From Laetmonice hystrix (Eukaryota): a stretch of DNA of 64,000 bases. The notes below the pieces were generated by a model that worked only from the letters and a program-made list of their open reading frames with translations, ran no database searches and had not been told where the DNA came from. Position 1 is the stretch's first letter. The number at the start of each line of letters is the position of its first letter. Both the position numbers and the translations under genes were made by a program. Location of the stretch: the NCBI GenBank assembly GCA_965235115.1, contig OZ249441.1:1860001-1924000 (forward strand), read 5' to 3'. Shown here one piece after another: positions 35,222 through 59,713 of this stretch.

Positions 35222-36316
35222 ACAGTGGTCGCAGGTATGCCGACTGGTGACAGTGGTCGCAGGTATGCCGACTGGTGACAGTGGTCGCAGGTATGCCGAC
35301 TGGTGACAGTGGTCGCAGGTATGCCGACTGGTGACAGTGGTCGCAGGTATGCCGACTGGTGACAGTGGTCGCAGGTATGCCGACTGGTGACAGTGGTCCC
35401 AAGTATGCCGACTGGTGACAGTGGTCCCAAGTATGCCGACTGGTGACAGTGGTCGCAGGTATGCCGACTGGTGACAGTGGTCGCAGGTATGCCGACTGGT
35501 GACAGTGGTCGCAAGTATGCCGACTGGTGACAGTGGTCGCAGGTATGCCGACTGGTGACAGTGGTCGCAGGTATGCCGACTGGTGACAGTGGTCGCAAGT
35601 ATGCCGACTGGTGACAGTGGTCGCAGGTATGCCGACTGGTGACAGTGGTCGCAGGTATGCCGACTGGTGACAGTGGTCGCAGGTATGCCGACTGGTGACA
35701 GTGGTCGCAGGTATGCCGACTGGTGACAGTGGTCGCAGGTATGCCGACTGGTGACAGTGGTCGCAAGTATGCCGACTGGTGACAGTGGTCGCAGGTATGC
35801 CGACTGGTGACAGTGGTCGCAGGTATGCCGACTGGTGACAGTGGTCGCAAGTATGCCGACTGGTGACAGTGGTCGCAGGTATGCCGACTGGTGACAGTGG
35901 TCGCAGGTATGCCGACTGGTGACAGTGGTCGCAGGTATGCCGACTGGTGACAGTGGTCGCAGGTATGCCGACTGGTGACAGTGGTCGCAGGTATGCCGAC
36001 TGGTGACAGTGGTCGCAGGTATGCCGACTGGTGACAGTGGTCGCAGGTATGCCGACTGGTGACAATGGTCGCAGGTATGCCGACTGGTGACAGTGGTCGC
36101 AGGTATGCCGACTGGTGACAGTGGTCGCAGGTATGCCGACTGGTGACAATGGTCGCAGGTATGCCGACTGGTGACAGTGGTCGCAGGTATGCCGACTGGT
36201 GACAGTGGTCGCAGGTATGCCGACTGGTGACAGTGGTCGCAGGTATGCCGACTGGTGACAGTGGTCGCAGGTATGCCGACTGGTGACAATGGTCGCAGGT
36301 ATGCCGACTGGTGACG
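35222..36316. repeat. 28-bp minisatellite, ~39 copies
   Basis: Unit cagtggtcgcaggtatgccgactggtga. Confidence 0.95.
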
Positions 36317-36545
36317 CGGACTTCTTTCCACCGATTTACGACCTGAGACGCAATGATCTTTGCCAAGATCATAATTACGTGAAACTTATAACACGGCAAG
36401 CGGAAGGTGCTGCAAGTATCATCAGCCGCAAGACAATAGGAGTGCTCATCGAATCGAATGGATGAATTTCGTCTCAAACCATCGCTCTAATTCATTCCTA
36501 ACGTATGTCAATGATATCCTTTTTGTTTAATTGGTGAGAGTGAGC

Positions 36546-37157
36546 TAACTGTTGCCCATATCAGGTCAGGGATTTACTAACTGTTGCCCATATCAGGTCA
36601 GGGATTTACTAACTGTTGCCCATATCAGGTCAGGGATTTACTAACTGTTGCCCATATCAGGTCAGGGATTTACTAACTGTTGCCCATATCAGGTCAGGGA
36701 TTTACTAACTGTTGCCCATATCAGGTCAGGGATTTACTAACTGTTGCCCATATCAGGTCAGGGATTTACTAACTGTTGACCATATCAGGTCAGGGATTTA
36801 CTAACTGTTGCCCATATCAGGTCAGGGATTTACTAACTGTTGCCCATATCAGGTCAGGGATTTACTAACTGTTGCCCATATCAGGTCAGGGATTTACTAA
36901 CTGTTGCCCATATCAGGTCAGGGATTTACTAACTGTTGCCCATATCAGGTCAGGGATTTACTAACTGTTGCCCATATCAGGTCATGGATTTACTAACTGT
37001 TGCCCATATCAGGTCAGGGATTTACTAACTGTTGCCCATATCAGGTCAGGGATTTACTAACTGTTGCCCATATCTAGGTCAAGGATTTACTAACTGTTGC
37101 CCATATCAGGTCAGGGATTTACTAACTGTTGCCCATATCAGGTCAGGGATTTACTAG
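36546..37157. repeat. 32-bp minisatellite, ~19 copies
   Basis: Unit aactgttgcccatatcaggtcagggatttact. Confidence 0.95.
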
Positions 37158-37300
37158 GCCTTACCTTACACCAACATATAACCAACACTTGGATTTATTA
37201 ATTGAAGTCGACACCTTGCAATGAGATAATCAAGCCACTGGACCGCGTTTAATTGATTAGTAAGTCATGCCAGGCTTCCATTAATACGGACATCCTATTT

Positions 37301-38092
37301 ATACCCTCCACATATCTGACCTCTAAAACTGGTATACCCTCCACATATCTGACCTCTAAAACTGGTATACCCTCCACATATCTGACCTCTAAAACTGGTA
37401 TACCCTCCACATATCTGACCTCTAAAACTGGTATACCCTCCACATATCTGACCTCTAAAACTGGTATACCCTCCACATATCTGACCTCTAAAACTGGTAT
37501 ACCCTTCACATATCTGACCTCTAAAACTGGCATACCCTCCACATATCTGACCTCTAAAACTGGTATACCCTCCACATATCTGACCTCTAAAACTGGTATA
37601 CCCTCCACATATCTGACCTCTAAAACTGGTATACCCTCCCCATATCTGACCTCTAAAACTGGTATACCCTCCACATATCTGACCTCTAAAACTGGTATAC
37701 CCTCCACATATCTGACCTCTAAAACTGGTATACCCTCCACATATCTGACCTCTAAAACTGGTATACCCTCCACATATCTGACCTCTAAAACTGGTATACC
37801 CTCCACATATCTGACCTCTAAAACTGGTATACCCTCCACATATCTGACCTCTAAAACTGGTATACCCTCCACATATCTGACCTCTAAAACTGGTATACCC
37901 TCCACATATCTGACCTCTAAAACTGGTATACCCTCCACATATCTGACCTCTAAAACTGGTATACCCTTCACATATCTGACCTCTAAAACTGGCATACCCT
38001 CCACATATCTGACCTCTAAAACTGGTATACCCTCCACATATTGGACCTCTAAAACTGGTGTATCCTCCACATATCTGACCTCTAAAACTGGA
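37301..38092. repeat. 33-bp minisatellite, ~24 copies
   Basis: Unit ataccctccacatatctgacctctaaaactggt. Confidence 0.95.
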
Positions 38093-39245
38093 ACGTATAG
38101 CCTTGCGCAATTGCTAAAAACCATAGTATTCACCGGCAAAACTGCAATATACTACTAGGCCTACATATCGAGTTCTAAATGTACATATATGGGGTCTGAT
38201 ATTCATTGATTGCGCATGCCCTTCAAAAAGTGCCCAATTCCAACTACCTGACTAAACCTACTTATCTTGTAATCGGCGGTAAGTAAGAGAGCCAGGTCAA
38301 GTATCCGATCAAAGTGAAGACAAGTAAGGAGAGACGTAGACGAGGACATCGGAAAGGTTGCAGTGAGGCGCCGGGCCTCAGGCCGTTAATCCCACTCCGT
38401 GGAGCACTTAGGTGGCTACATTTACAAAGGCTTATCCCCTGTCAGGATTTCCCGTTTTCCCGGATCTTCATCACTGATTCAAATGTGAACTTTCGCTGTC
38501 GTAAACAAAAGTAACCTTCCTAATCTAATCAAATCTCTGATCCCTTACTGAATTCTCTTTAAAATAATAATAAAATCATAAAATAATATATTATTAAACG
38601 TCGGAGAACACGTCGAATAGGCCTATCATTGAATCAAAAACCTTATCGAATGATGGCATTAGCAAATAATACTAGATTGTTCGATAATAGGTACCCGAGG
38701 CTGGCCCAGCGAGGCCTACCTTGGTGCAATGACTAGAATTGGTGTGGTGTGGCCAACATTTTTATTTCGTTGTTTCCAAAGTGGCTTGCCTGACCCCCGC
38801 GAATTAACACTATGGTGTTGGGCATGGGTCTGTGGAATCAAAACCAAAACATTTTTATATAAATGAAGTAACTCTATTTACAAAATCCGTTTGCTCAACC
38901 GTGTATTGTATTTTACAATGACAAAAGTTCTTGATAAAGTTCTGAGGCACGTAATCGTTTCGCCTTTTTTCATACTCTCTAGACTCCACAACATTCCGTC
39001 AGGTAGGAGCCAGACATACAACCGTAGGGCACATTAAGGGTACTTGTGTAGGTCGTATAAAACACTTAACTCGTCATTAGTCAGGATGGTCAAACTTTTC
39101 TTACTCTAGGTGTCTATGTGACGCAGGTTTCATTCTTAGAGCTTGTACTCATAACCGGTCATAACCGGTCATAACCGGTCAGATCCGGTCATTTCATACC
39201 AAGGGTTCAAATAACGGGTAATCATAGACCAAGCGAACATGAATC

Positions 39246-40995
39246 TTATGTTTTGGAATTCGTCATCAAATGTGGTGCACATTTCCTTAGGCATTTAAGA
39301 GACGGGGGCCGAAGGTGTCTACACAGTTCAGTGTAGCACTGGCTGAATAAGAGTAGTGCCGACCTCTTTCTATCATAACCATAGTTCATGGGGTCCACCC
39401 AGCGTTTGTCTCGGTTTTTGAGCTCTGATTTGCAGTTAGCGCAGTCCGTGTTTCCGAGGTTTCCACAGAAGACGTCGTCGCATCCGTTTCCAAGCGTTCG
39501 GACAACTTCCGGTTTGACGTGATCGGATTCGGTTTCGCCCACCAGATCCGACTTGGATTTAAAGTCTGATAGGTCTCCATCGAGCCAAGGTTTCGCGAGT
39601 GCCCGTTTCCCCTTCGCGAATTGGGACGCGTCTAGCCAACGTTTGTTTGCGTTCTCGTTGTTTCCCGTTGTTTCTTTAATGCGTTCCTGGCCGTTTTCGT
39701 TGTCGTTAACTTGTTCGTCGTCTGCGTTGTCTTCATTGGACTGATAATGGTCGATCAAGCGTTTCTCATTATGTCCGCGGTCGGTGGCGCTGACGTCTTT
39801 GCCATGACGTCCATAGTGTGACGGATCTAACCAGCGTTTGGAGGTCACCATGTCATTGTCCCCGTCAGAATCATCACCGAACGCTGCTTCTCGATCGTCT
39901 CGTTTGAAATGTAACGAATCCAGCCAACGTTTTTCATTCAGGAGTTGATGGTCGCCCACCCAGACTTTCTCGGGTTCACCATTGAGAGGGACTACCGATT
40001 TCTTATCGAACTGGGATGAGTCTATCCATTTCTTATCATTGAAATGAGAGGAATCTATCCATTTCTTATCCAGGTGGGATGCTCCGAATCTTTTCTTGTT
40101 TTTGAAATGGGAGGAGTCGAGCCATCGTTTGTCAAAATGTGAAGAATCAATCCATTTTTTATCGAACTGAGAAGAATCAATCCATTTCTTATTGAATTGA
40201 GAAGAATCGATCCACTTCTTATCGAACTGAGAAGAATCAATCCATTTTTTATCGAACTGGGAAGAATCAATCCATTTTTTATCGAACTGGGAAGAATCAA
40301 TCCATTTTTTATCGAACTGGGAAGAATCAATCCATTTTTTATCGAACTGGGAAGAATCAATCCATTTTTTATCGAACTGGGAAGAATCAATCCATTTTTT
40401 ATCAATCTGGCGGTTTGGATTTAACAGCTTACCGTTCTTCACGTCTTTAGCATCAAGCCACTTTTTTTCATTGTAATGTGAGGCATCTAGCCATCGTTTG
40501 TCAAAATGCGATGCGTCAAGCCATTTCTTATCATTGTAATGGGCAGAATCTCTCCATTTCTTTTGGAATTGAGTTGCGTCGACCCATCTTTTGTTAAAAT
40601 GGGACGAATCCAACTTCTTGTCAAATTGAGAGGAGTCAATCCACTTCTTTCCGAACTGGGACGAATCAATCCACCTTTTACGAAACTGGGATGAATCAAT
40701 CCACTTTTTACGAAACTGGGATGAATCAATCCACTTTTTGCCAAATTGAGAGGAGTCAATCCATTTTTTCCCAAACTGGGAGGAATCAATCCATCTTTTG
40801 CCGAACTGGGATGAGTCAATCCACTTCTTGAACAGGCCACCCTCTCGAGGAGAACTAGTCCATGCCTTAATTAACTTCAAGTTGCCGGATCGACATGACC
40901 TGAGCACGCAGAGAACACGTGCATAGCCTTCCTTCCCGACCGGGCATTGTTGGCGTGCACACTCATGGAACTGACCGGCTGGCCTGGCGTTGGAC
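39246..40995 (-). CDS. Multi-copy neuropeptide precursor, main (last) coding exon; WIDSSQF/WLD-type peptides
   Basis: Acceptor ttgtctctgtctattcag|G at 40996/40995, with an open frame to TAA at 39246. About 30 peptides are flanked by KK/KR/RKR, some with Gly amidation donors, separated by acidic spacers, with Cys modules. Many synonymous differences among identical peptide copies indicate coding constraint. Confidence 0.9.
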
Positions 40996-41783
40996 CTGAA
41001 TAGACAGAGACAACGTGTAAACTTATTAGACAGGATTCCGTTAACACCTTCTGTCGGTGTCTGCAGTGATTGTAACACAGCTTTGTCGTAATCCTTACGA
41101 TCGACAAATACAAACGACGTACAAAGGCTGCCACCACCTTGCCATTAGACTTTTCATGGAATATTTAACATGTTTCGAATCGATACATATTTTCAAAACG
41201 TTAAAACCAGTTGTTTTAATGAGGCTAGATCCCTCTATATTTCGCAAGTTTTAGTAACGGAGAACTGCGGTTTGTACATGGAAAACAGCTCGTCTCTTGT
41301 CATGGCGAGCATTATGATAAGGGCACCGCGGGCGCTAAACCTCATTCATGGCTATTTGCCTCCAAATGAGCTCATCTGAAGGAAGCTGGCCGCGTAATGG
41401 CTGCCTCCATTGCGAGACCTTTCAACTCATAACTTTTGATGGGGGTGAATGGGTACCTGTAATTTACTTCTAACAAGAGTTATATTGTTAGCGGTTTAAA
41501 GAGACAGTTTACCATTCGAGAGAGAAATGCTGCCGATTTCAAGGACGTAAGATTTGATGAGTGAGAGATAGATTCTAGTAGGCTATATCTCCGCGATAAT
41601 TCGGCACCAGTAAATAGTCGAGAGGCTGGGTATATCTTTCGTTCTTCTAATTCGTTTCATCTGATCCCCAATTCGCATGACATATGAGACGATCATTACT
41701 TATCAAAACTTTGTGGTTAAAGTTTACTTGTACCAGAGTAAGCCACTATTCCCTTTTAACATCCTGAAGGCGAAATCTGTGAC

Positions 41784-42424
41784 GTCGAGGGCCATAAAGT
41801 ACATCAGATCTGTAAACACCATCTCTATATACAATAACATTAGACAGATGTCTATGGGTTAAGTGATACGTCGAGGGCCATACAGTACATTTGTAAACAC
41901 CATCTCTATATACAATAACATTAGACAGATGTCTATGGGTTAAGTGATACGTCGAGGGCCATACAGTACATTTGTAAACACCATCTCTATATACAATAAC
42001 ATTAGACAGATGTCTATGGGTTAAGTGATACGTCGAGGGCCATACAGTACATTTGTAAACACCATCTCTATATACAATAACATTAGACAGATGTCTATGG
42101 GTTAAGTGATACGTCGAGGGCCATACAGTACATTTGTAAACACCATCTCTATATACAATAACATTAGACAGATGTCTATGGGTTAAGTGATACGTCGAGG
42201 GCCATAAAGTACATGTGTAAACACCATCTCTATATACAATAACATTAGGCAGATGTCTATGGGTTAAGTGATACGTCGAGGGCCATACAGTACATCTGTA
42301 AACACCATCTCTATATACAATAACATTAGGCAGATGTCTATGGGTTAAGTGATACGTCGAGGGCCATACAGTACATTTGTAAACACCATCTGTACACAAA
42401 ACATTAGGCAGATGTCTATGGGTT
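41784..42424. repeat. 81-bp minisatellite, ~8 copies
   Basis: Unit gtcgagggccatacagtacatttgtaaacaccatctctatatacaataacattagacagatgtctatgggttaagtgatac. Confidence 0.92.
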
Positions 42425-45400
42425 AAAGGAAGCTTATTAACGACCGCCCTAACAATGCTAACGCGGTCATGGCGGTCGTTCTCGGTTCTCAGTCCATTGA
42501 GATGAAAAATATGGGATGTATCGCCTCATTATGGCTCATAATCAACAACAGACCGAACACAACAATGTTATGGATACGACAGAATGTTTTATCAGTCCAG
42601 TGAGATAGATTCAAGATCAGGTAAGCTTGAAATACGCGGATTCGTAGGAGATGGGGACAAAACTCGGCGGCCGCGTATAGGTGATCGGTTACCTTTAAGT
42701 GATCATAAGACAAGAGGTTTCCTTCTCATTCTCTCGGCAGGTACCGGGAATGTACCGGGAATGTACCGGGAATGACGAAGACGCTGTTCGGAAATGGACA
42801 TCATTACGATACGGGAAGGAAGCCGGATGTAGACTGAAATCACCCGCGTGGAAACGGCCGGCCACGTACCGACATCGACCATCTCCTAACACATTTACCA
42901 CAGTATACGTGGACACTTAGCCTTTATAATACCGTGTACGAGGAGCTGGATTCATTCTTCAATTTGTACTGGCTACTCTTCCCACTGAGGAATCCTTATA
43001 CCACAACACCTTGATCAGTTTATTCGAGATGGGTGAGATTGTTCATATTACAATATTTAGAGGCCATGTATTTTGTTATACTAACATGTTACAATATTTA
43101 GAGGCCGTATATTTTGTTATACTAACAGGTCTGACTAGCATTATAATCCCTCTCCAAGCTTCCCTAGAACATGCATGCTGATCATAAACCGTTAAATATA
43201 TTTCATGCCGGCAGAAGTGCATGCATTCGGAATTTAAAGCGCCATATTACTTCGATAGTTCACAATCATGTGCCACTCTTGTCCCAGGCATTACAATACC
43301 ATTTTTGACAACATTAAGCCGTATGAATTCTCATAATGTCTTTAAATCTTAGCAGCAGAACACCACTCCGATCTAATCATTTCTCCACACACAGAAGATC
43401 AACCCCCCGGCGGTAATGTAAACTCCTATCCTTTACATCAGCACTGTATTAATTTAATCAGTGGATAATTAATCGTATAAAAGAATAGGAACAATTGAAG
43501 CTGGCACACATGTGTAAGTAGTAGCTGATGTTGCTGCCACATATGTTCAATAACTTCGGTTAAGTACGATATAGGAAAATCATGGCTGGCGTTTTGGCGC
43601 TCGGGAAAAAAAGTCAGAGTTTAACGAAACTTTCCTGCTAAGTAATATCAGAACAACAAAAACACCATCTGAGTGACTTTAGTTCAAACAATCTGTGATA
43701 ATTCCATGAGGTAACATTAACGGCTGTCGTCATTTGAGACGGATTAATATTTTCGTCTGATTCCTGACGTTTGAGTTCCACCTCTTTAATCAATGATCTG
43801 AGACGAAACATTTCGTGTGACGCTGGCACAACAGATCAGCGAGCAGCTGGTGGGCCTTTACAAACTATCGCACAGCCCAACATGAATACGTTCACATTTT
43901 GTGGACAGGATTTGTGACAAAGACTTCAGAGGCTTCCTGCTTAACAACCATGTATAGTAGTGGAGATAATTCAACTGCACAATAAAAAAAGGGATTGAAA
44001 GGCATATTGACATTCGCCGCATGCTTTGTACTCTAAGGTCGTTCGTAAAACGGAATCTTTCCAAATTATGGTAAATCATATCGAATATCCGACGTCGTAA
44101 GGAAGGCGCGCTCCGGTTTAAAAGATCTCTTTCTTCACAATGACGTTCCCCTTGTATAGCGAGACTTTATTAGGCAGTTAGTACACCTTGTGGTTATTTA
44201 CTGCTATTGACAACCACATTTCAGTGTATTAGATACTGATATGACCGATGATTAGGTTTCTAACAGGCATGTTATTCAATCACGCCGGCTTCCACTGAAC
44301 GTAATGAATGTTTTCTCTGTCAATTCTGGATTTGGTCAGCGAGTTGAAGGGTCAATGACAAGCTTGTGTCTTGACGCTCCAGTTTTGATGGCTGTGGAGC
44401 TGTCGCGCACTGATGACAAGAGCGTTTTTATGAGCACAACCTTTGACAGCCAGAAAATGAAATCATTCATAAGAATAATCGTAAAATTCTCAATGGGCAC
44501 TTTATACATTGTTACGGGTGAACATTACAGAGAATAACATCCTTCCTCGTGCAATATTGACCTTTGTTTAAAAGTGGGTAAACTTCCCTTTGTACATTTT
44601 ACACATCGCTGACAGCGCAGGAGTATTTGGGTGTTTCCTTCCTGTTCTAACTCTTACCATCTGCCATTTCGCAAGCTTTTGCCAATAAAGATACTCCATA
44701 CACCATTGGGTTTTGTAGCCTTATTGTGACGGAGGCTATTGTTCATGAGACATCCCTGTGACGAGAAACAGTGAATTTGGATGGCGATGAGTCATCGATT
44801 GGTTCCGGGCTTCCGCGACATATGTGCTTATATACAGATGAACTCCACGTGCATGGAATTCGTTTTGCTGTCATGATAATAACGTCTACATGTGGCTCGC
44901 TATAATTCAATTAATACAAACAACTTCTGTGAAACATATCGGTAAGTTTCTTAACAAAAATATGCCTGCGTGAATGGCTCGATTTTCTCCGTATAGGACA
45001 TAATCATCTTCATCGTCGTGTCTTGCTTTCCTTTTCGAAGTAACGTTATAAAACAAGTGCAACTTTTTGTCGCGACAAAAATGTTGATTACACTTGCGTG
45101 ATGAGGTATAAAATTATCATTTTCATGTTACAAATCGGATTGGCTTAACGTAAGTTATTTCGTGGGAGCGAGCCGAGACCCACATACACAAGGCGCCAAG
45201 TGACTTCGTTTGGTGACTATGACAGGGATTCATTGTGTTAGAAAAGTATCTTTTACTGTTGTTCTAACCGTCTGCACCTCTGAAGCCAGATGTGTAATGG
45301 CAAAGATAGTACTTCATTCAGGTAAGCAGGTCATGGTGTTTGAAATACCGGCTACTAACATCTCAAACAAACCTCAGCCCACGAACAGTGACCATCCATG

Positions 45401-46654
45401 TATACCAACCTGATGATAGGCAGCGTACGGAAACAGCTGGCGTTAAACAAACCGGACATTGTGGCCTGTAACACGCTCAACCACTACTCGTCCCCGTCTG
45501 TGGTCGTAAAGAGATATCATCAAGTTGTAGAAACCATTAGGATTTCCATAATTTCCTATCAAGAATTAGGAAACCTTACACACGCTCACACAATCAGCCG
45601 TTGGCGGCGATGGTCACCACTTCGTACCCAGCCTCGCTCTCACACTCACGCAACCCGCCACTCTCTGTATCCATGGCAATCAAATATTTGCTGTGGAATC
45701 GGATCCTTCCCCTGGGATTAGTGTCTGATCAATTGAGGGGGTTCTCACCAACGCTACAATTATTGCCGTGAAATCCTTGCCAAATGAAAACAACTATGCA
45801 TAGTTTGGCTGTACAGGTCCTTTGGTTTGTACAAATTTTCCTGACGATTCTATCTTTGTGACCTCACTGGACAGGTTGAAAAAACGAGTTTATCCTGTTG
45901 GTTGATAGAGCTGTTCGTGGTGTTCGGCAACGTTCTGCCCAGCGGATCGGTCATTTCAGCCGTTAAACGCGAACAAAATTACCGTCACAATGCCCTAATT
46001 ATGTGAGGTGTGACCATTCACCTGTACGACCCTTATCAACGGTGCAGTTTAATAAAGGTTGAAAGCATGCTAACGTGAACCCGTCGTTAGGCTGAACGGA
46101 TAACGTCATTACATGACAACTTCACCATGGCAACAACACAGACGCGCTGAGGAACGCTATTACTTCCGGTTGTGGAGAGGTATAGCTTTGTTAAAATGTG
46201 CCTGTGGACGGCCCTGAGAGACGACCGAAATATAATGACGAACGCTCAGTTTAGATTTACTCCTGATGTGATAATTAATATCAACTGAATTATATGCCGC
46301 CAGGGATGGAAATGAAGGTCGTCTGTAATTATCTAGCCGTGCACTTCTCGCGAGATAACGTCTTAACCAACACTGCAGATTGCAACGTAAAGTGCACGTT
46401 ATAATAACATACATGGTGGTTTGAATCTTGTGAACATTTCTGTGAGAGGGAATCAGTGTCTCCTCAGTTTCACACGACAGTCGAACAGCCTGGAACAGTT
46501 TGTAATCATCACCTCATCAATCTGGTCTGAGTGGGTGAAACCGACTTGTTCTCGCCCTGAATGTGACCAACCATTACCGACAGGTCGTGAACAACCCATC
46601 AACTTCACCACTACCACGCTCTTCTTGTCGCGAATGTTTCAAGAACCAGACCGT

Positions 46655-47200
46655 ATGATGCTAAGTACAGAAGAACTACATAGGCAATATGGTATACAAT
46701 ATCTTGATGTCAGACGAAATCAACACCTCCTGTATCACATGTATAGATGTTCAAACAACCCACTGTTGCTCAAGGACGGCACACAAGGCATCCAATCACG
46801 TGCCAGTAAAAAGATCAGATTTGAAATCGACAGACCAAAAAAAGCACTGTACTTCCGTTGCCCAATGTACAGAGGAACAAAAGCCTGGGACAACCTCTCT
46901 ATAGAAACGCAAACTGCAGTATCCCTACCGTATTTCAAGCGTAACATACGGACTAATACTTAATCCAACTCATATAGTCCGTGTCATCATGTACCTATAT
47001 ATATACGTGTAATAAGTGAAACTGTGTATATATACACCTAGGTATCTATGATACAGCATAAGGGTGACGATACTAAGCAAGGCAAATGTATTCATCATTA
47101 CACTAACATGTTTCTTACACGTTAATGATTCATATGTTGATGTATACCAGCAGTGAAAATCATATGTAAAGTGTGACTGCTGAAGACCTAATAAAAAAAA
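46655..47200 (+). mobile_element. 5'-truncated non-LTR retrotransposon (LINE ORF2 C-terminus, 3' UTR and A tail)
   Basis: STEELHRQYGIQYLDVRRNQHLLYHMY...RASKKIRF...PMYRGTKAWDNLSIETQTAVSLPYFKRNI resembles the post-RT C-terminal region of CR1/L2-like LINEs; it ends in aataaaaaaaa at ~47190-47200. Confidence 0.6.
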
Positions 47201-47296
47201 CAGAGAACGGAGGAGAGCGGATAAGAGAGTGATACTCTTAATTTGGTTTTGATTACAGCGATAATATTTTCTCTCATTATTTAATTATCATTGGAG

Positions 47297-47420
47297 GCCT
47301 TTCGTTTTCAAGCTGCACACGGATGCACCTTTCGTTTTCAAGCTGCACAAGGATGCACCTTTCGTTTTCAAGCTGCACAAGGATGCACCTTTCGTTTTCA
47401 AGCTGCACAAGGATGCACCT
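47297..47420. repeat. 30-bp tandem repeat x4
   Basis: gcacctttcgttttcaagctgcacaaggat. Confidence 0.85.
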
Positions 47421-48011
47421 CGCGTTTCCGTTTGGAGTACTTTCATTAAGTGCATAACATGGGTCCTTGAGGACAAAACTATTCTATTCCTAATATTCAT
47501 TTCTAAAGAGCTTGCAAATTATTTATTTCATTTTCCATTTTTGACATCCCGTCATATTTCACCTAGGCCTAAGATCAACTAGCATGATCTTATCAATGAA
47601 CCCCATCGTTGTCATAGTGATCCATGTATACGTCACCATTAAATATTATCTCTTTCTTGGCGGACAGACCTCTGGCGTTCTTTAGCAGAGAGATACTTTA
47701 TTCCCAACTGACCCTTTAATTTTAAATGCCGCCTGTTTACTCTACCTCCGTCAAGAACACAGTTCTGTGACTTCTTGACCGCACACTGCTGTGTATTAAA
47801 GTTTAGCCATTACTGTGCCTGGCGCCTCATGCCGCTCGCCATCCGGTACTGCTGTGAGAAAAGTACTTTGCGAGAAATCTCCATGCCTCGGAACTACCGG
47901 GGCCGGATCCCCAGACCATTACTCCATCCAACTTCTTTTCCTGGATCCGATGATAAGGGGAGAGCATTGAAGCCGGCCACGGTCACAATGGGCAAGGTGG
48001 CAATGGTAGAC

Positions 48012-48056
48012 CTCCTCCTCCTCCTCCTCCTCCTCCTCCTCCTCCTCCTCCTCCTC
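48012..48056. repeat. (CCT)n microsatellite
   Basis: Direct inspection. Confidence 0.9.
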
Positions 48057-51000
48057 TGCCACCGCCGCTCAGACCAATTTCCACCAACGGCAGACATTCG
48101 CGACCTCCCAATCCCTGTAGGCGTTGGTCGATGGCCATCCCGAATAGAACTGTTTTAAGGCGTGCCACTTGCTGCATTAACAAACATTCCGGGTACACAG
48201 GCATGACTCCCCTGGCGGGAGAATGTCGCATACTCCTGCCCCAGGTTACACCAATCTCTGTCTGTTATTGACAAGGTTTCAGGATGAGGCGTACATGTCT
48301 TCTACAGGTATGAGGAAGGAATGTTGTCGCTAGAACGTCATCAACCTGACCAATATTTACTATCTCTGTCTGAGTTCGAAGTCGAGAGGTCATTATACAA
48401 TTGCTCCCGAGTGCCCTCTAATTTACCGTAATGCAGACGCCGTTGTGCTTACAGAACGCATATTAACGTACCTTTTCATTGCCGAAATTGGAAATTTTCA
48501 TTGGCATTGGATTGTGTTGGCGTTTCTGTCTATAATTACTGCAGAATGGATTAACCAGGTCACCTGTGCCAGTGCCAGTCAATATATACAGGGCGTATGT
48601 AAATATCACGTTAACAAAAGCCGAGAAAATAATCACAACTCTGTGGTTTGTTATGATTATTACTTTCGTAAGTCTGTACTGATATAATACGATACGTGGT
48701 CGGATGTTTTGTTCACGTCGAGTCTGTGTAAATACAGTATTTCTGATACAAAACCGGGCACGCCCTGTTTTGCGTGCATGCATGGAAGGCCCAATGAAAA
48801 ACCTTGTCTCCCGATTACTTGCGGGCTGCGTCGACCTTGAGGATAAGGGGGGAGCGTCTCCGACTTTCTTCTTCTCGACTTCTAATGGCCCCCTTCCCCC
48901 TATCTTATGTCCTACTAAAAGTTTATTGCAAACTCTCCAATATGATGTGACACAGCCAAGTGACTCGAGTTAGGTCAGAGTAGTGATGGTGATTACAACA
49001 ATATGACATTTACATCTACCTGCCTTTCTAATACACGAGACTTGAACGAAGAACATTGTTATACGCCTGCATAAGAAACATTGCAATGTCAAAAATTCAG
49101 TTGGTGTAATTGTTACTTTGTATGTACTGTCACGTCGTGTCAAATATTATTCTCACTCTATAATACAGCCGCCACTCTAATTATCATCGGTTTAAATGTC
49201 GAATAAATAGAATTTACAGGACAGAATGTTGTACTTCTCATTCTATCTACTCGTCGTCGTACAGAGTCGGTTCAAATGTTCACAGCAAGTAAATACTTAA
49301 TATGATATGGCTGAGTGGCATGCGTGAAAACAACAAAAATGCGAGCGAGCGATTTAGAGAAGAAAACTTTGGACAGAACAAATAACTTACTGGTTTAAAA
49401 AGGTCGTACCACTCGATCAAAACGTTTTGATCTACGCGTGCATGTGCCTGCAAGTCCAAGAAAACCTCATTCCGACCAGTAAACTGATGGCTAGAAGTCA
49501 AACAGACCCACCTTACAGATGAACTCATAAAGCAGTGAGTGAGCACACCTGACGGTGCTATACGTCATGCTATGGACCTACGCGTTTTTGTCAACTCCCT
49601 AAAAAAGGGGTTTCAATGTAAGCAAACACACCACACGTTACACGCCACGCCACGCGTCAAAATCTGAAGCATCAGGTATGTTCCCAACCCTTAAGTATAT
49701 TTATCCTGAAGATGAAGTTGTTTTTCTTCATGGACTATTCCGTCGTTTGTGGCATTATTTTAGCTTTGACTACTAGAGTCTATGATAAAATAATGATCGA
49801 AAACTAACAGAATTTCTTTACAAATAGGATATTAAATGGTAAGATATTTAGCACATGCTCATTATGATAGTTATATACAGGATGTAAACAAAGGAAAAAC
49901 TGCCATAAAACATTGATGACGGTCCCCTCAGGGTTTCTTTAACCGCCCGAATATCTCCTGGCATGCAGATGACGTTGACGACGACTCGATTTGGCAGGAG
50001 GACCCTAACGTAATCAAAGGCACTACGACGCCGCACAAGTATCATGGACACCCGCACAACTCGGCCATTTATTGGCTGAGTTGTCAACCGACGACGTTTG
50101 TTCGAAATGACACGCCTACGCGTCTGCTCCGTCAGAGGAACTTCGCAGTGAATTATGTATTCCTCTCTGCTAATTGCGTCGGGATTTAGAATGAAATGAT
50201 TGCTGTTGGCAACTTATGTTTCATTGACGACAGCGTCATCATTTGGAGGACGTGAGTGATGGTTACGTTAAGGGAAGGCTTGCGAGAGACAGTCGTCGTA
50301 ATATGCTACCGGATTGCATGCCTGCGTAAGGTCGGAACTGGCAGCTGCAAAAACTTGAAATGTAAATTACTTTAAATGTCTAAATTATAATACTGTAAAG
50401 GGTAAAAGGTATAGCAAACGCATGAGCGTATAGAATACAGCCTCATACTGTAAGGGCCGCCCCACCATCAGTAGAAGATGGCATGTAAGATAGCGTTACC
50501 TTACTGCAGCTGGTTTTATAGTAATGCCAGCTTCATACTTGTAATAATGTTTTTCGGCCACGCGGCGTTTGCTTTGCGTATTTAATGTATACAACTTGAT
50601 GACGTCGCACGCCCGTTTGTTACGTCAGCAAACAGCGCTGCGGCGTTATGGCGCCATGCTCTGTACACTGCGACAAAGATGTAATGTCATGTATATGCAG
50701 TTATTCATCATCTTTTGGTTGTACATTGCAGTTGGCGACATGGTTAGGAATGGCCTGAGTTGGCACAAAGTCACCTCAAACGTCTACAATCAATTAGTAT
50801 GCCCTTGATCAGTTCCTATAATCCCCAATTATTTAATATTTTTGGCCTCCCGGGAAGGCCAGCCGAATGAGCGCAGACATCCTGACACGCACAATAGTCC
50901 GTCTATAGATCTACTCGTAGGTGGCGAGTCTATTTGCGGCAGTGCTGCATCGGGCCGGCGCCATTCTTCGCGGCAACACCGCAACTTTACCGCCATTACG

Positions 51001-53049
51001 GCCAACTTGTGGAGCTCATCCAGCTTATCGCGCCAATTTTCTAAAATGCACGCTCATATAAATCGTACGGGAACCCGGGTAATGCGCAGGGGTGCATTGA
51101 TAATGAGGACACCGCTTGCTAAACTGGGCCTGCTTCTTTTGATCCCAAGACAAACACACCCAGCATACGTTTAACGGTAAAGAAATATCACTACATGCTT
51201 GACGCACCTGTTCGATAACAGCAACCATTTTACAAACCGGTGTAGTAATCTAATGAGTGAGGTGGCGCGCATGCGCATATCTGGGCTGTGAGAGTTCTTT
51301 CTCCGGACGGTTCGAACAATGCCGATGATTGCCGAAAGGACCCGGGCGTAAGAATCGGCAAGAGTTCGATGGTGTCGCTCAGACAGGGTTGGATTTTGTA
51401 CGGACTGTTGATGACGTGACCATCACATGACCAAAGGTAGCGCTATGATTGGTTGCGCAGAAAGAGTGATTGCGACTTACACCGCCAGCATACGTCACAT
51501 TGTCGGTTCACGTGATCCACGGGAGCGGTACGTCGACCTGCCATTCAAACATGGTTGATTTTGCCGCAAGGCCCTTCGCAGTGGCAGTAGCGCTGAAATG
51601 GCGTGGCGGCAAAGTTTGCTTGTCACCGTATTGCCGCAAAACTTGATCCACAGCCGCGGTGGCACAAGCCGGGGAATGGCCGTGACGTCACCAAATGAGC
51701 GATCATGAGTCATTCGGGATTCCCTCGGCCATATCTTCGAAAGTAGCCTCGGGTGAAATAGGCGCCATTTTGAGCATTGCATCGCGGGTACATTTAGCCG
51801 GGACTCTCGACAGCATGGCAGTGCTTGCAGTATTTTGTCTGCATCAGGCCTACAGTGCTTTCCCCGAAGTCAGTGGGCAATATTACGATAGTATCATGTT
51901 CACGATACAACTTAAATTACAAGTAGTCCTACCATGTGTAGTCCAGTTGTCGTGGGCGCGGCCATATTGCTTCCCATAATTTCATAAATTACCGTATTGA
52001 CGCCCATTTAGGTAAATTAGGTGATTAATTTTTCTTCGTCAAACGTTTCCCTTCATACCAGAAATTTATATTTGCACATACAACGCCGACGGAGCAGGTG
52101 TCAATAATGTACTACTTCCTGGCTCGATGAGATATGACGGTTCACTCAGTGCCTCACTACACACCTCCATTTGGCCATGTATCCGGTTGCCAAACATGGC
52201 CGCTAATCCACCCGAGGGTATATTCGAATAGCAGGAAGTGACGTCATATGCCCGAGGGAGTCCCGAATGATAATGAGTGTTAGGTATAACGGTTAGGTTT
52301 AGCATCTTTTATCGCTCATTTTTATGACGTCACGACCATTTCCTGGCATGAGCCGCAGCAGTGACATAGTTGGGACGGAGCGGCGGTGAAACCGCAACTT
52401 TGCCGAAGTGCTACCGCAAGTGGTTCGCCCTATTAATTGTTTATGCTGAGCAAGATGGCAAGCGTTATTTTATACCCGACCGAGTGGAGGATATTAAAAA
52501 CTTAATTTCCGTGAATAAAAAGATAAAGAGGCAGACAGAAGACACAGAGTCAATCAAAGACCTTTGATTTGAAACTCTTGTATCTTTGTCAATCTCGTCT
52601 CGTCTCCTTCCTGGGTAGGATAATGACAAATACACAATTTCACAACGTGCATGCAATGGCTCTTTAAAACATCTCCCGCTGTGGCGTAGAGGATTGACTT
52701 CTAACTTCGACTTCGGCAATTGTTTTTTTTAACGCCAAGTAGGCCTACAGACACTGGCAGCCATTATCGTGATGATGATCCAACCTCATCTCATGAATAC
52801 CATATAGACGAGAGACAGGGCTAGACAGAAAATGTTCACTTTCATGTTATGACAAGCTGGCTACTCGGACGTCGTCAAACTACGAACGAATGTCGACGCA
52901 CGTAACGCGCTTCGCCTGCCACCTGACGAACTGAAAGTTTTCATCTCTGGGAACGTGTTTGGTGGGGGGGGGGGGGCAGAGACACTATGACTCGGCACCA
53001 TAAAGGAAGATGAACAACCATGCTGTACTCGATATTTTATAACTTGTAA

Positions 53050-53348
53050 TCAGTGGCAAGGCTGGGCTTGGGGCCCGCGGCTGTCTCGGCAACTAGTGGC
53101 AAGGCTGGGTTTGGGGTCCGCGGCTGTCTCGGCAACTAGTGGCAAGGCTGGGTTTGGGGTCCGCGGCTGTCTCGGCAACTAGTGGCAAGGCTGGGCTTGG
53201 GGTCCGCGGCTGTCTCGGCAACTAGTGGCAAGGCTGGGCTTGGGGCCCGCGGCTGTCTCGGCAACTAGTGGCAAGGCTGGGCATGGGGCCCGCGGCTGTC
53301 TCGGCAACTAGTGGCAAGGCTGGGCTTGGGGCCCGCGGCTGTCTCGGC
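53050..53348. repeat. 43-bp GC-rich minisatellite, ~7 copies
   Basis: Unit tagtggcaaggctgggcttggggcccgcggctgtctcggcaac. Confidence 0.92.
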
Positions 53349-54448
53349 TTCGCAACCTCACCCCTTCCCCGCACATTATAACGGGGCGTGGTAAATTCAG
53401 TAGTTTCAATGTTAGCAGGAACGTTATAATTAACATTAACACATGTTCATGCGCTCCCTGGATGTTATCCCCTGTAGCACCTGCCATACAACAAGAATTG
53501 AACTGATATCACTCGCTCGGAACAATTTCTGTTCCCTTTGCCGGGAATCGCTACTCCTGTTAACCTCGACTTTCACCTGGGTGGTGTCGTCCACTTCCGT
53601 CCATTCTCCTGATTGTCGCCGCCGCATCCCAAGCTACGACTGCCTTCCCATGAAGGCAATATCTTCACATTAAACGAAGAAAGAATTGATTTTCTCTTTG
53701 AGGTGCAAACCATGTAGTGGTTTATGGCCTTACAATGGCCGAGTGGTACAGCCAATGTGCGGGAGGCAGGGTGCCCTCGGGGTGAGACCGCCTACGATAA
53801 GGACCTTGGCTGCGCTATCTTCACACCCCTCTGGGTTTGAAAGCACCCCTCTCGGAGTCTGGCGCCGTACAAGGAGTGTACTCATGACATGGTCTCAGGC
53901 CTAGTTCAGCCGAGGCAAAGTCTGTGTGAATGCCATGTCTCCGAGCAAAGTCTTCGCCTCCCACTCGCACAACTCGGGGAGAGTCACTTCGATCACCGAG
54001 CCGAGTATAATTCGATGAAAGAGATCCATGGCTTCGCAAGGGAAGCCACCAAAAGAAACTCCTTTTTATACTTCAACGGAAGCATTGTTTTCTCAGATAA
54101 TATCGGACAAAGTTTTAGTATACAAGAGCGATATCGATAATTCTGCATAAAGTCCCGAAACTTCTGCCTATAGTGACTACATCAGGGCCTCTCAACCTCA
54201 AGGTTCCATTCGGAGTTATGTGAGAACGTTTGTTAATTATTTGCTGCAAGTTTGCAATGCATAAAAGACCAGTTCGATATGACTCTAACGGTTGCTAAGC
54301 GAAACAGTGCTAAACAATTATTTCCAATGATGGGCTCCCTTGACTGTTCTGTTCAATTTTTATTTATTTATTTATTTATTTTTGTCAGCTACTCCAATAC
54401 AGCCACATTTAACAGTTGTATAGAAACTGTATAGAATAAAGTACTCAC

Positions 54449-54491
54449 TCGGTTGGCGTTGGTTCTGTGGGTTGGGGGCTTGCCGTTGGGA
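54449..54491 (-). CDS. Neuropeptide precursor coding exon 2 (LPTASPQPTEPTPT-E)
   Basis: Acceptor tctttgttgcag and donor GTGAGT; 43 nt, phase 1 in and phase 2 out, matching the phase-2 acceptor at 40995. The joined CDS is 1845 nt (614 aa). Confidence 0.7.
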
Positions 54492-54642
54492 CTGCAACAA
54501 AGATCCACACCAATAAATAACATCTCCCTCCCTGGTGAAATCAAAGCTAGGCCTACAGTTGAAGCTTCACAGCTTTCAACGGGGATTTGGAAACGATCTA
54601 ACTACAACGTGATTCACTTGTAACGTAAAAGATGTTACTTAC

Positions 54643-54694
54643 GCGTTAAAGCATAGATGCAGACGAAAAGTTCCAGAAGTTTGTGGTGGTACAT
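54643..54694 (-). CDS. Neuropeptide precursor coding exon 1 (signal peptide MYHHKLLELFVCIYALT)
   Basis: gccATG context and a hydrophobic N-terminus; 52 nt ending in phase 1 at a perfect GTAAGT donor (54642). Confidence 0.72.
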
Positions 54695-55793
54695 GGCAGA
54701 GCCGGTTTCGGTTTGGACTTGGCGGCTGTCGTGGCGTGTAGTGAGGGCCGCGCCAGTCAGTTGATGAGGTGAGCAGTTTAGAACTGCTGTCCACCTTGCT
54801 CCACGCTCTGCACCACTAGTGTCCGACGGCGCAGGGAGACATGGACATGTTGCCGAGAGACATCTCCAGCTTCTCGAACTCTGACGTAAGGATCTTTTCG
54901 ACGTGCGCAGCTGGTTTAAACGCTAGAGGGACTGCACGGGGGACTTTTGAGTAAAACAGGGCCGTTACCAGGTCCTTATCATTCCCCGACGACACACTGT
55001 CGATTAAATCAGTCAGACAACAATTAATGACAAGCCATCTACCGCGTAGATATGTTCCCGTTGTGGGCGTCTTACTTCGGACGTCATGCCCACGTGACAC
55101 CCAACAAGCGTTCCCTTTACCTGCGCACGCATTGTTATGCGCCGACTATGGTCGAATCAGCGCAGGGGTGACGCTTTCAGCGCCAGTTGGCCCCACCCTG
55201 ATGAGGCCCTATGTCACGGGGGCGTCTAAAGCATCTTCAGATGCCACGTCGAATGTCATTGCCAATGTCAGTCGCGAAAGTCTTGCTCTGTAAGGATTAT
55301 TCTGCCTTTATTACTTTTGTACTATAATTACAGAGCGGGAAAAGGTCAGAAGGACCAGGCTCCGATGAAAGGAAGCACGATATGCCTTTAAAGGATTAGG
55401 ATGTTTGTCGGTATGTTCTTATTATCAGACTTTTTCTCCCTCCCACTTTGATCCGTGGTCTGTCTAGACTGATCTCTGAGATACTATTTCAAAAAGAAGT
55501 GCAAACATCCGTCATCGCCTAAAGACAGGATAATACAATAACACAGTAAGAGTATGCCATCCGTTTACAACTCAAATTATTAAAACAATGGACAACAATA
55601 TGACACAACTTCTGCTGTCATTGCCAGCTTGTTGTCAAAGAGACCTCAGATCAGTTACAACTTTACATCGTTTTTAATTTATTCAACTTAACTCAAGCAA
55701 AATTTAAAATTGGCTGTAGACCTATATAATAGTCATTGTTACGGTTGTGAGGCACCCGGGAGGAAATAACATAGGATTGGAAGAGAGAGGGAG

Positions 55794-55902: not shown

Positions 55903-56035
55903 NNNNNNNNNNNNNNNNNNNNNNNNNNNNNNNNNNNNNNNNNNNNNNNNNNNNNNNNNNNNNNNNNNNNNNNNNNNNNNNNNNNNNNNNNNNNNNNNNN
56001 NNNNNNNNNNNNNNNNNNNNNNNNNNNNNNNNNNN
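55903..56035. other. Assembly gap (N run)
   Basis: 133 Ns. Confidence 0.98.
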
Positions 56036-59422: not shown

Positions 59423-59713
59423 NNNNNNNNNNNNNNNNNNNNNNNNNNNNNNNNNNNNNNNNNNNNNNNNNNNNNNNNNNNNNNNNNNNNNNNNNNNNNN
59501 NNNNNNNNNNNNNNNNNNNNNNNNNNNNNNNNNNNNNNNNNNNNNNNNNNNNNNNNNNNNNNNNNNNTCTCTCTCACTNNNNNNNNNNNNNNNNNNNNNN
59601 NNNNNNNNNNNNNNNNNNNNNNNNNNNNNNNNNNNNNNNNNNNNNNNNNNNNNNNNNNNNNNNNNNNNNNNNNNNNNNNNNNNNNNNNNNNNNNNNNNNN
59701 NNNNNNNNNNNNN
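59423..59713. other. Assembly gaps (two N runs, 59423-59567 and 59579-59713)
   Basis: Ns flanked by CT repeats. Confidence 0.97.

What the first reader, a model, noticed from the sequence alone, without database searches (positions are those of the whole stretch)
39246..40995. Multi-copy neuropeptide precursor releasing ~30 W-x-D-S-S-Q-F-type peptides
Seen: the one long non-satellite ORF is built of peptides flanked by KK/KR/RKR sites. There are 16 copies of WIDSSQF (9 WIDSSQFD, 4 WIDSSQF-G, 2 followed by R, 1 WIDSSQFN) plus WVDATQFQ, WRDSAHYND, WLDASHFD, WLDASHYNE, WIDSSHFD, WLDSSHF, WIDSSHFND, WLDSLHF, WLDPSHYG, WLDASQFA and WVDPMNYGYD, with acidic spacers. Established: this is the architecture of prohormone-convertase-processed neuropeptide precursors. 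Inference: it is a lineage-restricted peptidergic signalling system with no receptor known to me. From memory and unverified here, a precursor nicknamed 'WLD' was listed in the Platynereis neuropeptide set; if orthologous, this is a barely characterised family, otherwise a new one.
Basis: partly seen in the sequence, partly recalled or inferred. Interest (0 to 1): 0.9.

Follow-up and report, generated by a model that had tools for sequence, protein, structure and literature searches.

The report
Annelid WLD neuropeptide precursor gene
This is an intact gene of an annelid worm for a precursor that is cut into about 28 small "W-I/L-D-x-S-Q-F" signalling peptides; it is the counterpart of the little-studied WLD neuropeptide of Platynereis, which slows larval cilia, so it is a new member of a known family.

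Summary
Window 39246-40995 is one 1,750-nt exon. It holds 16 WIDSSQF copies (9 +D, 4 +G, 2 +R, 1 +N) and 12 variant W-x-D units, each preceded by KK/KR/RKR.

It is not a satellite read by chance. Across the 28 units, nucleotide differences fall mostly on third codon positions (527/200/1385).

The gene is the orthologue of the Platynereis dumerilii WLD proneuropeptide (GenBank JF811332). They share the repeat core, an N-terminal four-cysteine module, and a non-repetitive C-terminus: WVDPxNYGxD-RKRS plus a four-cysteine tail (25/55 identical, E 9e-15).

I found six more family members in public assemblies and transcript contigs, one of them a polyadenylated mRNA. So WLD, listed as Platynereis-specific in 2013, is more widespread.

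Features specific to this gene:
- four Gly-extended copies, predicting WIDSSQF-amide;
- a third cysteine module;
- a probable signal peptide on two mini-exons 13.4 kb upstream. The scan noted these before (s1-347172). I confirmed their splice sites and phases, but no RNA data exist.

The genome holds only one copy. I found no report of a receptor in the papers I could search. Verdict: real gene, new member of a known but barely characterised family, moderate interest.

The parts
54643..54694 (-). Predicted exon 1 (coding part). ATG at 54694-54692 encodes MYHHKLLELFVCIYALT plus 1 base; this is the start of the signal peptide. Donor ACGC|GTAAGT.
   Evidence: Sequence read; spliced translation built. 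Lead from scan note s1-347172. Inferred only: no RNA evidence.
54449..54491 (-). Predicted exon 2 (43 nt) encoding (L)PTASPQPTEPTPT(E). Acceptor ttgttgcag|TC, donor CGA|GTGAGT. It ends with 2 bases that join the first G of exon 3.
   Evidence: exon lengths 52+43+1750 nt give one open frame of 614 codons plus stop. Inferred; no RNA evidence.
40996..54448 (-). Intron 2, about 13.45 kb. It contains an 81-bp satellite (41782-42426) and no convincing coding ORF.
39246..40995 (-). Exon 3: 582 codons plus stop. It carries all the peptide copies and the three Cys modules.
   Evidence: The acceptor phase (one G completing a split codon) is the same in the homologous gene on L001.
40893..40961 (-). N-terminal four-cysteine module CARQQCPVGKEGYARVLCVLRSC (C-x4-C-x11-C-x4-C).
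   Evidence: Equivalent modules occur in Platynereis WLD, P0001 and P0152.
40614..40829 (-). Repeat block A: 7 x WIDSSQF (4 with G + dibasic, predicted amidated; 2 with RKK/RKR, free acid; 1 with D).
   Evidence: 30-bp tandem array.
40401..40613 (-). Divergent copies: (W lost) LDSSHFN, WVDATQFQ, WRDSAHYND, WLDASHFD, WLDASHYNE and the decayed WLDAKDV... spacer.
39999..40400 (-). Repeat block B: 9 x WIDSSQF (8 +D, 1 +N) plus WIDSSHFD, WLDSSHFKN, the decayed FGASHLD and WIDSSHFND. Five units are identical at the DNA level.
39483..39998 (-). Acidic spacer region with scattered single copies (WLDSLHF, WLDPSHYG..., WLDASQFAKG, and a PWLDGD remnant).
39432..39482 (-). Middle four-cysteine module CDDVFCGNLGNTDCANC.
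   Evidence: Counterparts occur in P0001, P0008, P0151, P0089 and P0152; Platynereis lacks it.
39372..39401 (-). Single-copy terminal peptide WVDPMNYGYD, flanked by KR and RKR. It is the most conserved peptide of the family.
   Evidence: Alignment A1.
39249..39362 (-). C-terminal 38-residue tail SALLLFSQCYTELCRHLRPPSLKCLRKCAPHLMTNSKT with the third four-cysteine module (39279-39338).
   Evidence: The AlphaFold2 model shows helix-loop-helix around the four Cys at modest confidence (mean pLDDT 66).
38761..38766 (-). First AATAAA downstream of the stop (479 nt): a possible polyadenylation signal.
   Evidence: untested.

Best explanation
This is the single-copy WLD proneuropeptide gene of an annelid, on the minus strand in three exons.

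Proposed mechanism:
1. A signal peptide on two mini-exons sends the 614-residue precursor into the secretory pathway (inferred).
2. Three four-cysteine modules probably form small disulfide-stapled hairpins (inferred).
3. Prohormone convertases cut after the 36 KK/KR/RKR/RKK sites and a carboxypeptidase trims the basic residues. This follows established precursor biochemistry. It is also supported because the Platynereis peptides detected by mass spectrometry are exactly the dibasic-to-dibasic fragments.
4. The predicted products are about 28 peptides that begin with Trp:
   - 9 WIDSSQFD and 1 WIDSSQFN;
   - 2 WIDSSQF as free acid;
   - 4 WIDSSQF-amide, from Gly-extended copies;
   - about 11 variants;
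   - one conserved WVDPMNYGYD.
5. By analogy with Platynereis, the peptides are released from a few sensory-neurosecretory cells. There they act through a receptor that has not been identified, lowering ciliary beat frequency and increasing ciliary arrests in larvae (inferred by orthology, not tested here).
For: - Observation and open frame.
- Selection on the encoded peptides: third-position bias 527/200/1385; 9 nucleotide versions of one heptapeptide.
- Orthology to Platynereis WLD: same repeat core, N-terminal Cys module and C-terminus (for the published sequence; 25/55 identical, E 9e-15).
- Collinear homologue P0001, E 5e-63, running N module, repeats, middle module, WVDP peptide, C tail.
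- Further members P0005, P0008, P0089, P0151, P0152.
- P0005 lies on a polyadenylated mRNA contig with its own signal peptide.
- Published Platynereis data: peptides WLDNSQFKDED and WLDNSQFRED detected by mass spectrometry (supplement file 9); WLD decreases ciliary beat frequency and increases arrests (PMC7017327, PMC3939940); expression in SN-WLD apical sensory-neurosecretory cells (PMC5747525).
- The exon 1-2 model has consensus splice sites and a fitting phase. The phase of the last intron is conserved in L001.
- One copy in the genome.
- The nearest protein-language-model look-alikes are all multi-copy neuropeptide precursors, but scores of 0.77-0.82 are weak.
Against: - There is no transcript evidence for this gene in this species. 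No RNA run holds either the big exon or the 5' exons, and the only runs available are genomic contigs of one sample.
- The signal-peptide exons are therefore inferred. They show no similarity to homologous loci, and the hydrophobic core contains a Glu.
- Processing, amidation, cell type, ciliary effect and receptor are all extrapolated from Platynereis or from general precursor biochemistry.
Confidence: 0.9

Rival explanations
1. It is a recently inactivated or silent relic of a WLD gene: the open frame persists but the gene is no longer transcribed or lacks a working first exon.
For: No RNA run holds it. The exon sits among satellites with a 13.4-kb intron. Several decayed copies exist (LDSSHFN, FGASHLD, WLDAKDV...).
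Against: - The frame is open for 582 codons with no stop.
- There is a strong third-position bias among copies.
- All 12 cysteines of the three modules and the terminal peptide are conserved.
- It is the only copy in the genome, so its loss would remove the family.
- Platynereis WLD is expressed at very low level and, as far as mapped, in very few neurons: one SN-WLD cell type, a pair of neurons. Absence from bulk data is therefore expected.
- The tool states that many organisms have no RNA run available.
Confidence: 0.05
2. It is a tandem DNA repeat (satellite) that happens to be open in one frame, or a repetitive secreted structural protein that is not processed into peptides.
For: 30-bp tandem arrays were detected by TRF. 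Neighbouring satellites also give long ORFs. There is a borderline Pfam hit to a repetitive antifreeze protein.
Against: - Neighbouring satellites are open in several frames at once; this one is open in a single frame only.
- Substitutions are concentrated at synonymous positions.
- The non-repetitive N- and C-terminal parts are conserved across species.
- Every unit in every homologue keeps the dibasic site directly before Trp.
- Processed peptides were detected in Platynereis.
- The CfAFP hit is 1 bit above the cut-off, covers only the repeat, and is absent in the homologues.
Confidence: 0.02
3. The WLD family is not an orphan lineage-specific family. It is a strongly diverged branch of the Wamide / myoinhibitory-peptide (allatostatin-B, prothoracicostatic peptide) superfamily and uses a related receptor.
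For: - The peptides start with Trp and end with an aromatic residue 6 positions later, and some copies are amidated here and in P0152.
- From my own knowledge, arthropod MIPs read W-[QR]-D-L-N-x-x-W-amide.
- MIP and WLD both increase ciliary arrests in Platynereis, and both are made by central apical-organ sensory cells.
- 'Prothoracicostatic peptide' is the third-ranked look-alike cluster, score 0.80.
Against: - Platynereis has a separate bona fide MIP precursor and receptor alongside WLD.
- The spacing is W-x5-F/Y, not W-x6-W.
- The C-terminal residue is not Trp, and most copies are not amidated.
- The look-alike score is in the range that shuffled sequences reach a third of the time.
- As far as I know, no Cys modules are reported in MIP precursors.
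Confidence: 0.05

Closest known systems
Platynereis dumerilii WLD proneuropeptide (GenBank JF811332, UniProt F8UKU1; Conzelmann et al. 2011/2013, PMC3890597)
   Same: - Multi-copy W-[LI]-D-x-S-[QH]-F peptides, each directly preceded by KK/KR.
- N-terminal four-Cys module before the first copy.
- Last peptide WVDP[LM]NYG[LY]D followed by RKRS and a C-x4-C-x9-10-C-x3-4-C tail (25/55 identical, E 9e-15).
- No amidation on most copies.
   Different: - Core is WIDSSQF instead of WLDNSQF.
- C-terminal extension is a single D/N instead of KDED/RED/NED.
- Four Gly-extended copies predict WIDSSQF-amide and two predict free WIDSSQF; Platynereis has neither.
- An extra (middle) Cys module that Platynereis lacks.
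- Precursor of 614 against 421 residues.
Unannotated homologues in public assemblies: P0001 (NCBI GCA_013332975.1 and GCA_029980185.1), P0151/P0008, P0089, P0005 (mRNA contig of ERR6338308/9), P0152 (ENA ERZ22147071)
   Same: - Same precursor layout. P0001 is collinear over the whole exon (E 5e-63).
- P0001 has all three Cys modules. The fragments P0151, P0008 and P0089 show the middle and C-terminal ones over the part they cover.
- The phase of the intron before the big exon is the same in L001.
   Different: - Lineage-specific cores: WLDMSQFS/A, WLDNSHYID.
- P0005 lacks Cys modules and the WVDP peptide.
- P0152 carries mainly WVDPxxY peptides, many followed by G-KR (amidated), and is only 24% identical.
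Myoinhibitory peptide / allatostatin-B / Wamide precursors
   Same: Multi-copy, dibasic-flanked peptides with an N-terminal-side Trp and a C-terminal aromatic residue. Both cause ciliary arrest and are expressed in the apical organ of Platynereis.
   Different: The defining W-x6-W-amide is absent, and Platynereis has a separate MIP gene. I therefore treat this as a functional analogy only.
Generic multi-copy proneuropeptides (FMRFamide/FLP, tachykinin, NPLP1 precursors)
   Same: Signal peptide, tandem peptide copies between dibasic sites, acidic spacers, and mixed amidated and non-amidated products. These are the nearest language-model look-alikes.
   Different: No sequence relationship. There are no Pfam family hits apart from a spurious one.

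Membership tests
WLD proneuropeptide family (type: Platynereis JF811332) | Many copies of W-[LIV]-D-x-[SA]-[QH]-[FY], each immediately preceded by a dibasic cleavage site | tested here: met
   28 dibasic-anchored units, 16 of them WIDSSQF; Platynereis repeats.
WLD proneuropeptide family (type: Platynereis JF811332) | Conserved non-repetitive C-terminus: WVDPxxYGxD, then [RK]KRS, then a four-Cys tail | tested here: met
   BLASTP 25/55 identical, E 9e-15 against the Platynereis C-terminus; alignment A1 with invariant W, V, D, P, Y, G, K, R, S and C columns.
WLD proneuropeptide family (type: Platynereis JF811332) | Four-Cys module between the signal peptide and the first peptide copy | tested here: met
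   CARQQCPVGKEGYARVLCVLRSC at 40893-40961, against NCHKCKSLEGAAKLKCVARAC in Platynereis.
WLD proneuropeptide family (type: Platynereis JF811332) | N-terminal signal peptide | tested here: inconclusive
   A candidate lies on two mini-exons with consensus splice sites and the correct phase. There is no RNA support and no signal-peptide predictor was available.
WLD proneuropeptide family (type: Platynereis JF811332) | Peptides actually produced (mass spectrometry) and expressed in sensory-neurosecretory neurons | not testable with these tools
   Shown only for Platynereis.
WLD proneuropeptide family (type: Platynereis JF811332) | Peptide lowers ciliary beat frequency and increases arrests | not testable with these tools
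   Published for Platynereis only.
Wamide / MIP / allatostatin-B family | W-x6-W-amide peptides (C-terminal amidated Trp) | tested here: not met
   All units are W-x5-[FY]. None ends in Trp, and only 4 of 28 core copies are Gly-extended.
Prohormone-convertase-processed multi-copy neuropeptide precursors (architecture class) | Tandem short peptides separated by KK/KR/RxKR sites, acidic spacers, secretory targeting | tested here: met
   36 dibasic sites; acidic spacer at exon-3 residues about 360-450. Secretory targeting is inferred only.

The most novel reading that the evidence does not exclude
WLD may be an old, widespread family rather than a nereidid oddity. Its ancestral ligand may be the single, highly conserved WVDPxxYGxD-type peptide. 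In the divergent homologue P0152 this type is multi-copy and amidated.

On this reading, the species-specific W[IL]DxSQF arrays are fast-evolving, concertedly amplified derivatives. The three disulfide-stapled four-Cys hairpins would be either sorting domains or further hormones.

If the family proved to be a diverged branch of the Wamide/MIP system, or to use a new receptor type, the conserved core defined here would make the orphan ligand directly testable for deorphanisation.
Probability: 0.15. Interest if true: 0.6.

Novelty: new member of a known kind. Interest (0 to 1): 0.35.

Why it matters
WLD is one of the few Platynereis neuropeptides with a demonstrated behavioural effect: it slows or arrests cilia, so larvae sink. 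It is made by identified apical-organ sensory cells. Yet it was classed as species-specific, and I found no report of a receptor.

Finding clear orthologues in this annelid and in at least six other public sequence sources has three consequences:
- The system is conserved.
- The invariant pharmacophore can be defined: a free N-terminal Trp, Asp at position 3, Ser at position 5, Gln/His at position 6, an aromatic residue at position 7, and a variable C-terminal extension.
- The single-copy WVDPxxYGxD peptide and the four-Cys modules stand out as conserved parts that have been overlooked.

The mixture of amidated, free-acid and Asp-extended forms of one heptapeptide within one precursor is a natural structure-activity series for receptor screens.

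Tried and rejected
- **Own scan for a one-exon signal peptide upstream**. It gave only weak candidates (47098, 53436, 43222). These were rejected in favour of the two-mini-exon model at 54449-54694.
- **RNA evidence.** Two run searches found no RNA holder. Read laying showed only genomic unitigs of a single sample, which break at the identical repeats, so it gives no independent support and no contradiction.
- **Similarity search of the predicted N-terminus** against homologous loci L001-L003, L014, L015 and L020: nothing above noise.
- **Second copies in the same genome**. All other hits are satellites or unrelated repeats.
- **Pfam and PDB.** The only Pfam hit is borderline: CfAFP antifreeze, 26.9 bits against a cut-off of 25.9, on the repeat and absent in homologues. 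I judge it spurious. There were no PDB sequence matches.
- **Search with P0152 for more WVDP-type members:** it found only itself.
- **Literature.** Searches for the peptide strings and for accession numbers of the homologue-bearing assemblies found nothing, so the source organisms of the homologues remain unnamed. The 2011 PNAS and 2015 Cell Reports papers are not held.
- **Thiel et al. 2021** (nemertean, brachiopod and phoronid peptidomes) does not mention WLD.
- **Atlas look-alikes** are all below 0.9 and serve as leads only.

Full report
**Observation**

The finding's range is the last exon of a minus-strand gene. The ORF listing gives one open frame, 39246..41078 (-), of 610 codons. The other frames over the same DNA are short.

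The sequence shows a polypyrimidine tract and AG at 40997-40996, so the exon starts at 40995. One G completes a split codon, and the codon frame runs from 40994.

- 16 WIDSSQF: 9 +D, 4 +G, 2 +R, 1 +N.
- 12 further dibasic-anchored W-x-D units.
- A few decayed copies.

TRF sees two 30-bp arrays, 39998-40410 and 40607-40830.

**Is it more than a satellite that happens to be open?**

Yes.
- The 16 identical heptapeptides are written in 9 nucleotide versions, and all 6 variable sites are third codon positions. That subset was chosen by amino-acid identity, so I repeated the test on all 28 units.
- Over all 28 units, pairwise nucleotide differences by codon position are 527/200/1385. 48% of differing codons are synonymous in the reading frame, against 17% and 3% in the two shifted frames.
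- The flanking true satellites (28, 32, 33 and 81 bp) are open in several frames at once. This array is not.

**What it is**

The supplement of Conzelmann et al. 2013 (PMC3890597) prints the Platynereis dumerilii WLD precursor (GenBank JF811332). Its layout is:
- a signal peptide;
- a four-Cys stretch NCHKCKSLEGAAKLKCVARAC;
- about 20 WLDNSQF/WLDNSHF/WLDHSQF peptides with acidic tails between KK/KR sites;
- KKWVDPLNYGLDRKRS and a four-Cys C-terminal tail.

The window protein has the same layout. Its non-repetitive C-terminus aligns to the Platynereis one at 25/55 identities, E 9e-15.

**Relatives elsewhere**

- A word-indexed search found one full-length homologue, P0001 (575 aa, E 5e-64). It lies on contigs of two NCBI assemblies and in one metagenome.
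- P0001 is collinear with the window protein: N-terminal Cys module, WLDMSQF repeats, a middle Cys module, WVDPLAYGYD-KKRS, and the Cys tail (E 5e-63).
- The exhaustive HMMER search over 1.84 billion representatives gave many low-complexity hits. Filtering for the motif left P0005, P0008 and P0089.
- A profile search added P0151 and P0152.
- P0005 sits on a 1.1-kb contig with a 5' UTR, its own signal peptide, AATAAA and a poly(A) tail. It is therefore an mRNA, and the family is expressed in at least one further species.
- P0152 lies on a 196-kb contig and is 24% identical. It is a divergent member whose copies are mostly WVDPxxY, often followed by G-KR, with the same Cys modules.
- The source organisms of these records could not be named with the tools.
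- In the window's own 627-Mb genome there is a single copy. All other hits are unrelated satellites.

**Gene model**

The big exon lacks a start codon and a signal peptide. My own scan for a one-exon solution gave nothing convincing. An earlier scan note (s1-347172) pointed to 54449-54694. Reading that stretch gives:
- ATG at 54694 and 52 coding nt ending ACGC|GTAAGT;
- then ttgttgcag|TC, 43 nt, ending CGA|GTGAGT.

The lengths 52+43+1750 nt give one open frame of 614 codons: MYHHKLLELFVCIYALT-L-PTASPQPTEPTPT-E-SNARPAGQFHEC....

Splice consensus, phase and a hydrophobic core all fit. The phase of the last intron is the same in the P0001 gene.

No RNA run holds either part. The only runs served are genomic contigs of one sample. 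The 5' exons are therefore inferred. A possible poly(A) signal lies 479 nt after the stop.

**How it most likely works**

*Established for the family, in Platynereis:*
- Peptides that are exactly the dibasic-to-dibasic fragments (WLDNSQFKDED, WLDNSQFRED) were detected by mass spectrometry.
- The gene is expressed in identified apical sensory-neurosecretory neurons, SN-WLD.
- WLD lowers ciliary beat frequency and increases arrests.

*Inferred here:*
- Secretory targeting.
- Disulfide formation in the three modules. The AlphaFold2 model of the C-terminal 63 residues places the Cys pairs on two helices of a hairpin at mean pLDDT 66.
- Convertase cleavage at 36 dibasic sites, carboxypeptidase trimming, and amidation of the four Gly-extended copies.
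- Release of about 28 peptides that act on an unidentified receptor.

*Specific to this species:*
- The WIDSSQF core.
- Very short C-terminal extensions.
- Amidated, free-acid and Asp-extended forms of the same heptapeptide arranged in two sub-arrays.
- A third Cys module that Platynereis lacks.

*Across species:*
- The multi-copy core differs by lineage but is homogenised within each precursor.
- The single WVDPxxYGxD peptide and the Cys tail are the most conserved parts.

**Comparison with what is known, and novelty**

- In 2013 WLD was listed among precursors without orthologues outside Platynereis.
- No later paper in the searchable library reports orthologues or a receptor.
- Pfam has no family for it; the single hit is a spurious borderline match. 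The PDB has no relative.
- The language-model look-alikes are other multi-copy neuropeptide precursors at weak scores.
- A relationship to Wamide/MIP peptides is conceivable, but the defining W-x6-W-amide feature is not met.

The finding is a sound new member of a known but barely characterised family. It also shows that the family is more widespread than published. It is not a new kind of system.

Noticed in passing
window 36000-38091 and 41782-42426: Four clean satellites surround the gene or lie inside it: 28 bp x 11 (36000-36315), 32 bp x 19 (36545-37156), 33 bp x 24 (37300-38091) and 81 bp x 8 (41782-42426, inside intron 2). Each gives long spurious ORFs in several frames.
   Followed up: partly
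window 54882-54889 (minus strand): TTACGTCA, one mismatch from the cAMP-response element TGACGTCA, lies about 190 nt upstream of the predicted start codon. It may be a regulatory element of the neuropeptide gene or a chance match.
   Followed up: no
window 40593-40613 (minus strand): One copy reads KK-LDSSHFN-KR. A whole Trp codon appears to have been lost in frame from a WLDSSHFN unit, which would make it a decaying copy inside an otherwise constrained array.
   Followed up: partly
L020:6001-7104 (ENA ERZ22147071, 196-kb contig): P0152 is a divergent WLD-family precursor whose copies are WVDPxxY peptides, many followed by G-KR (predicted amides), with three to four Cys modules. The source organism is unknown. 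It suggests that the WVDP-type peptide is an old component of the family.
   Followed up: partly
L012:85-939 (Logan contig of ERR6338309; also L013): A polyadenylated mRNA for a 284-residue WLD-type precursor (WLDNSHYID copies) with its own signal peptide, but without Cys modules or the WVDP terminal peptide. It is a reduced form of the family in an AT-rich species.
   Followed up: partly
window 39279-40961: Three four-Cys modules (C-x4-C-x7-11-C-x2-4-C) bracket the repeats. This was already noted by the scan (s1-347185). The AlphaFold2 model of the C-terminal one gives a helix-loop-helix at modest confidence. Their role (sorting domain or separate disulfide-rich peptide) is open.
   Followed up: partly
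window 55903-56035, 59423-59567, 59579-59713: Runs of N (masked or gaps) lie upstream of the predicted first exon.
   Followed up: no
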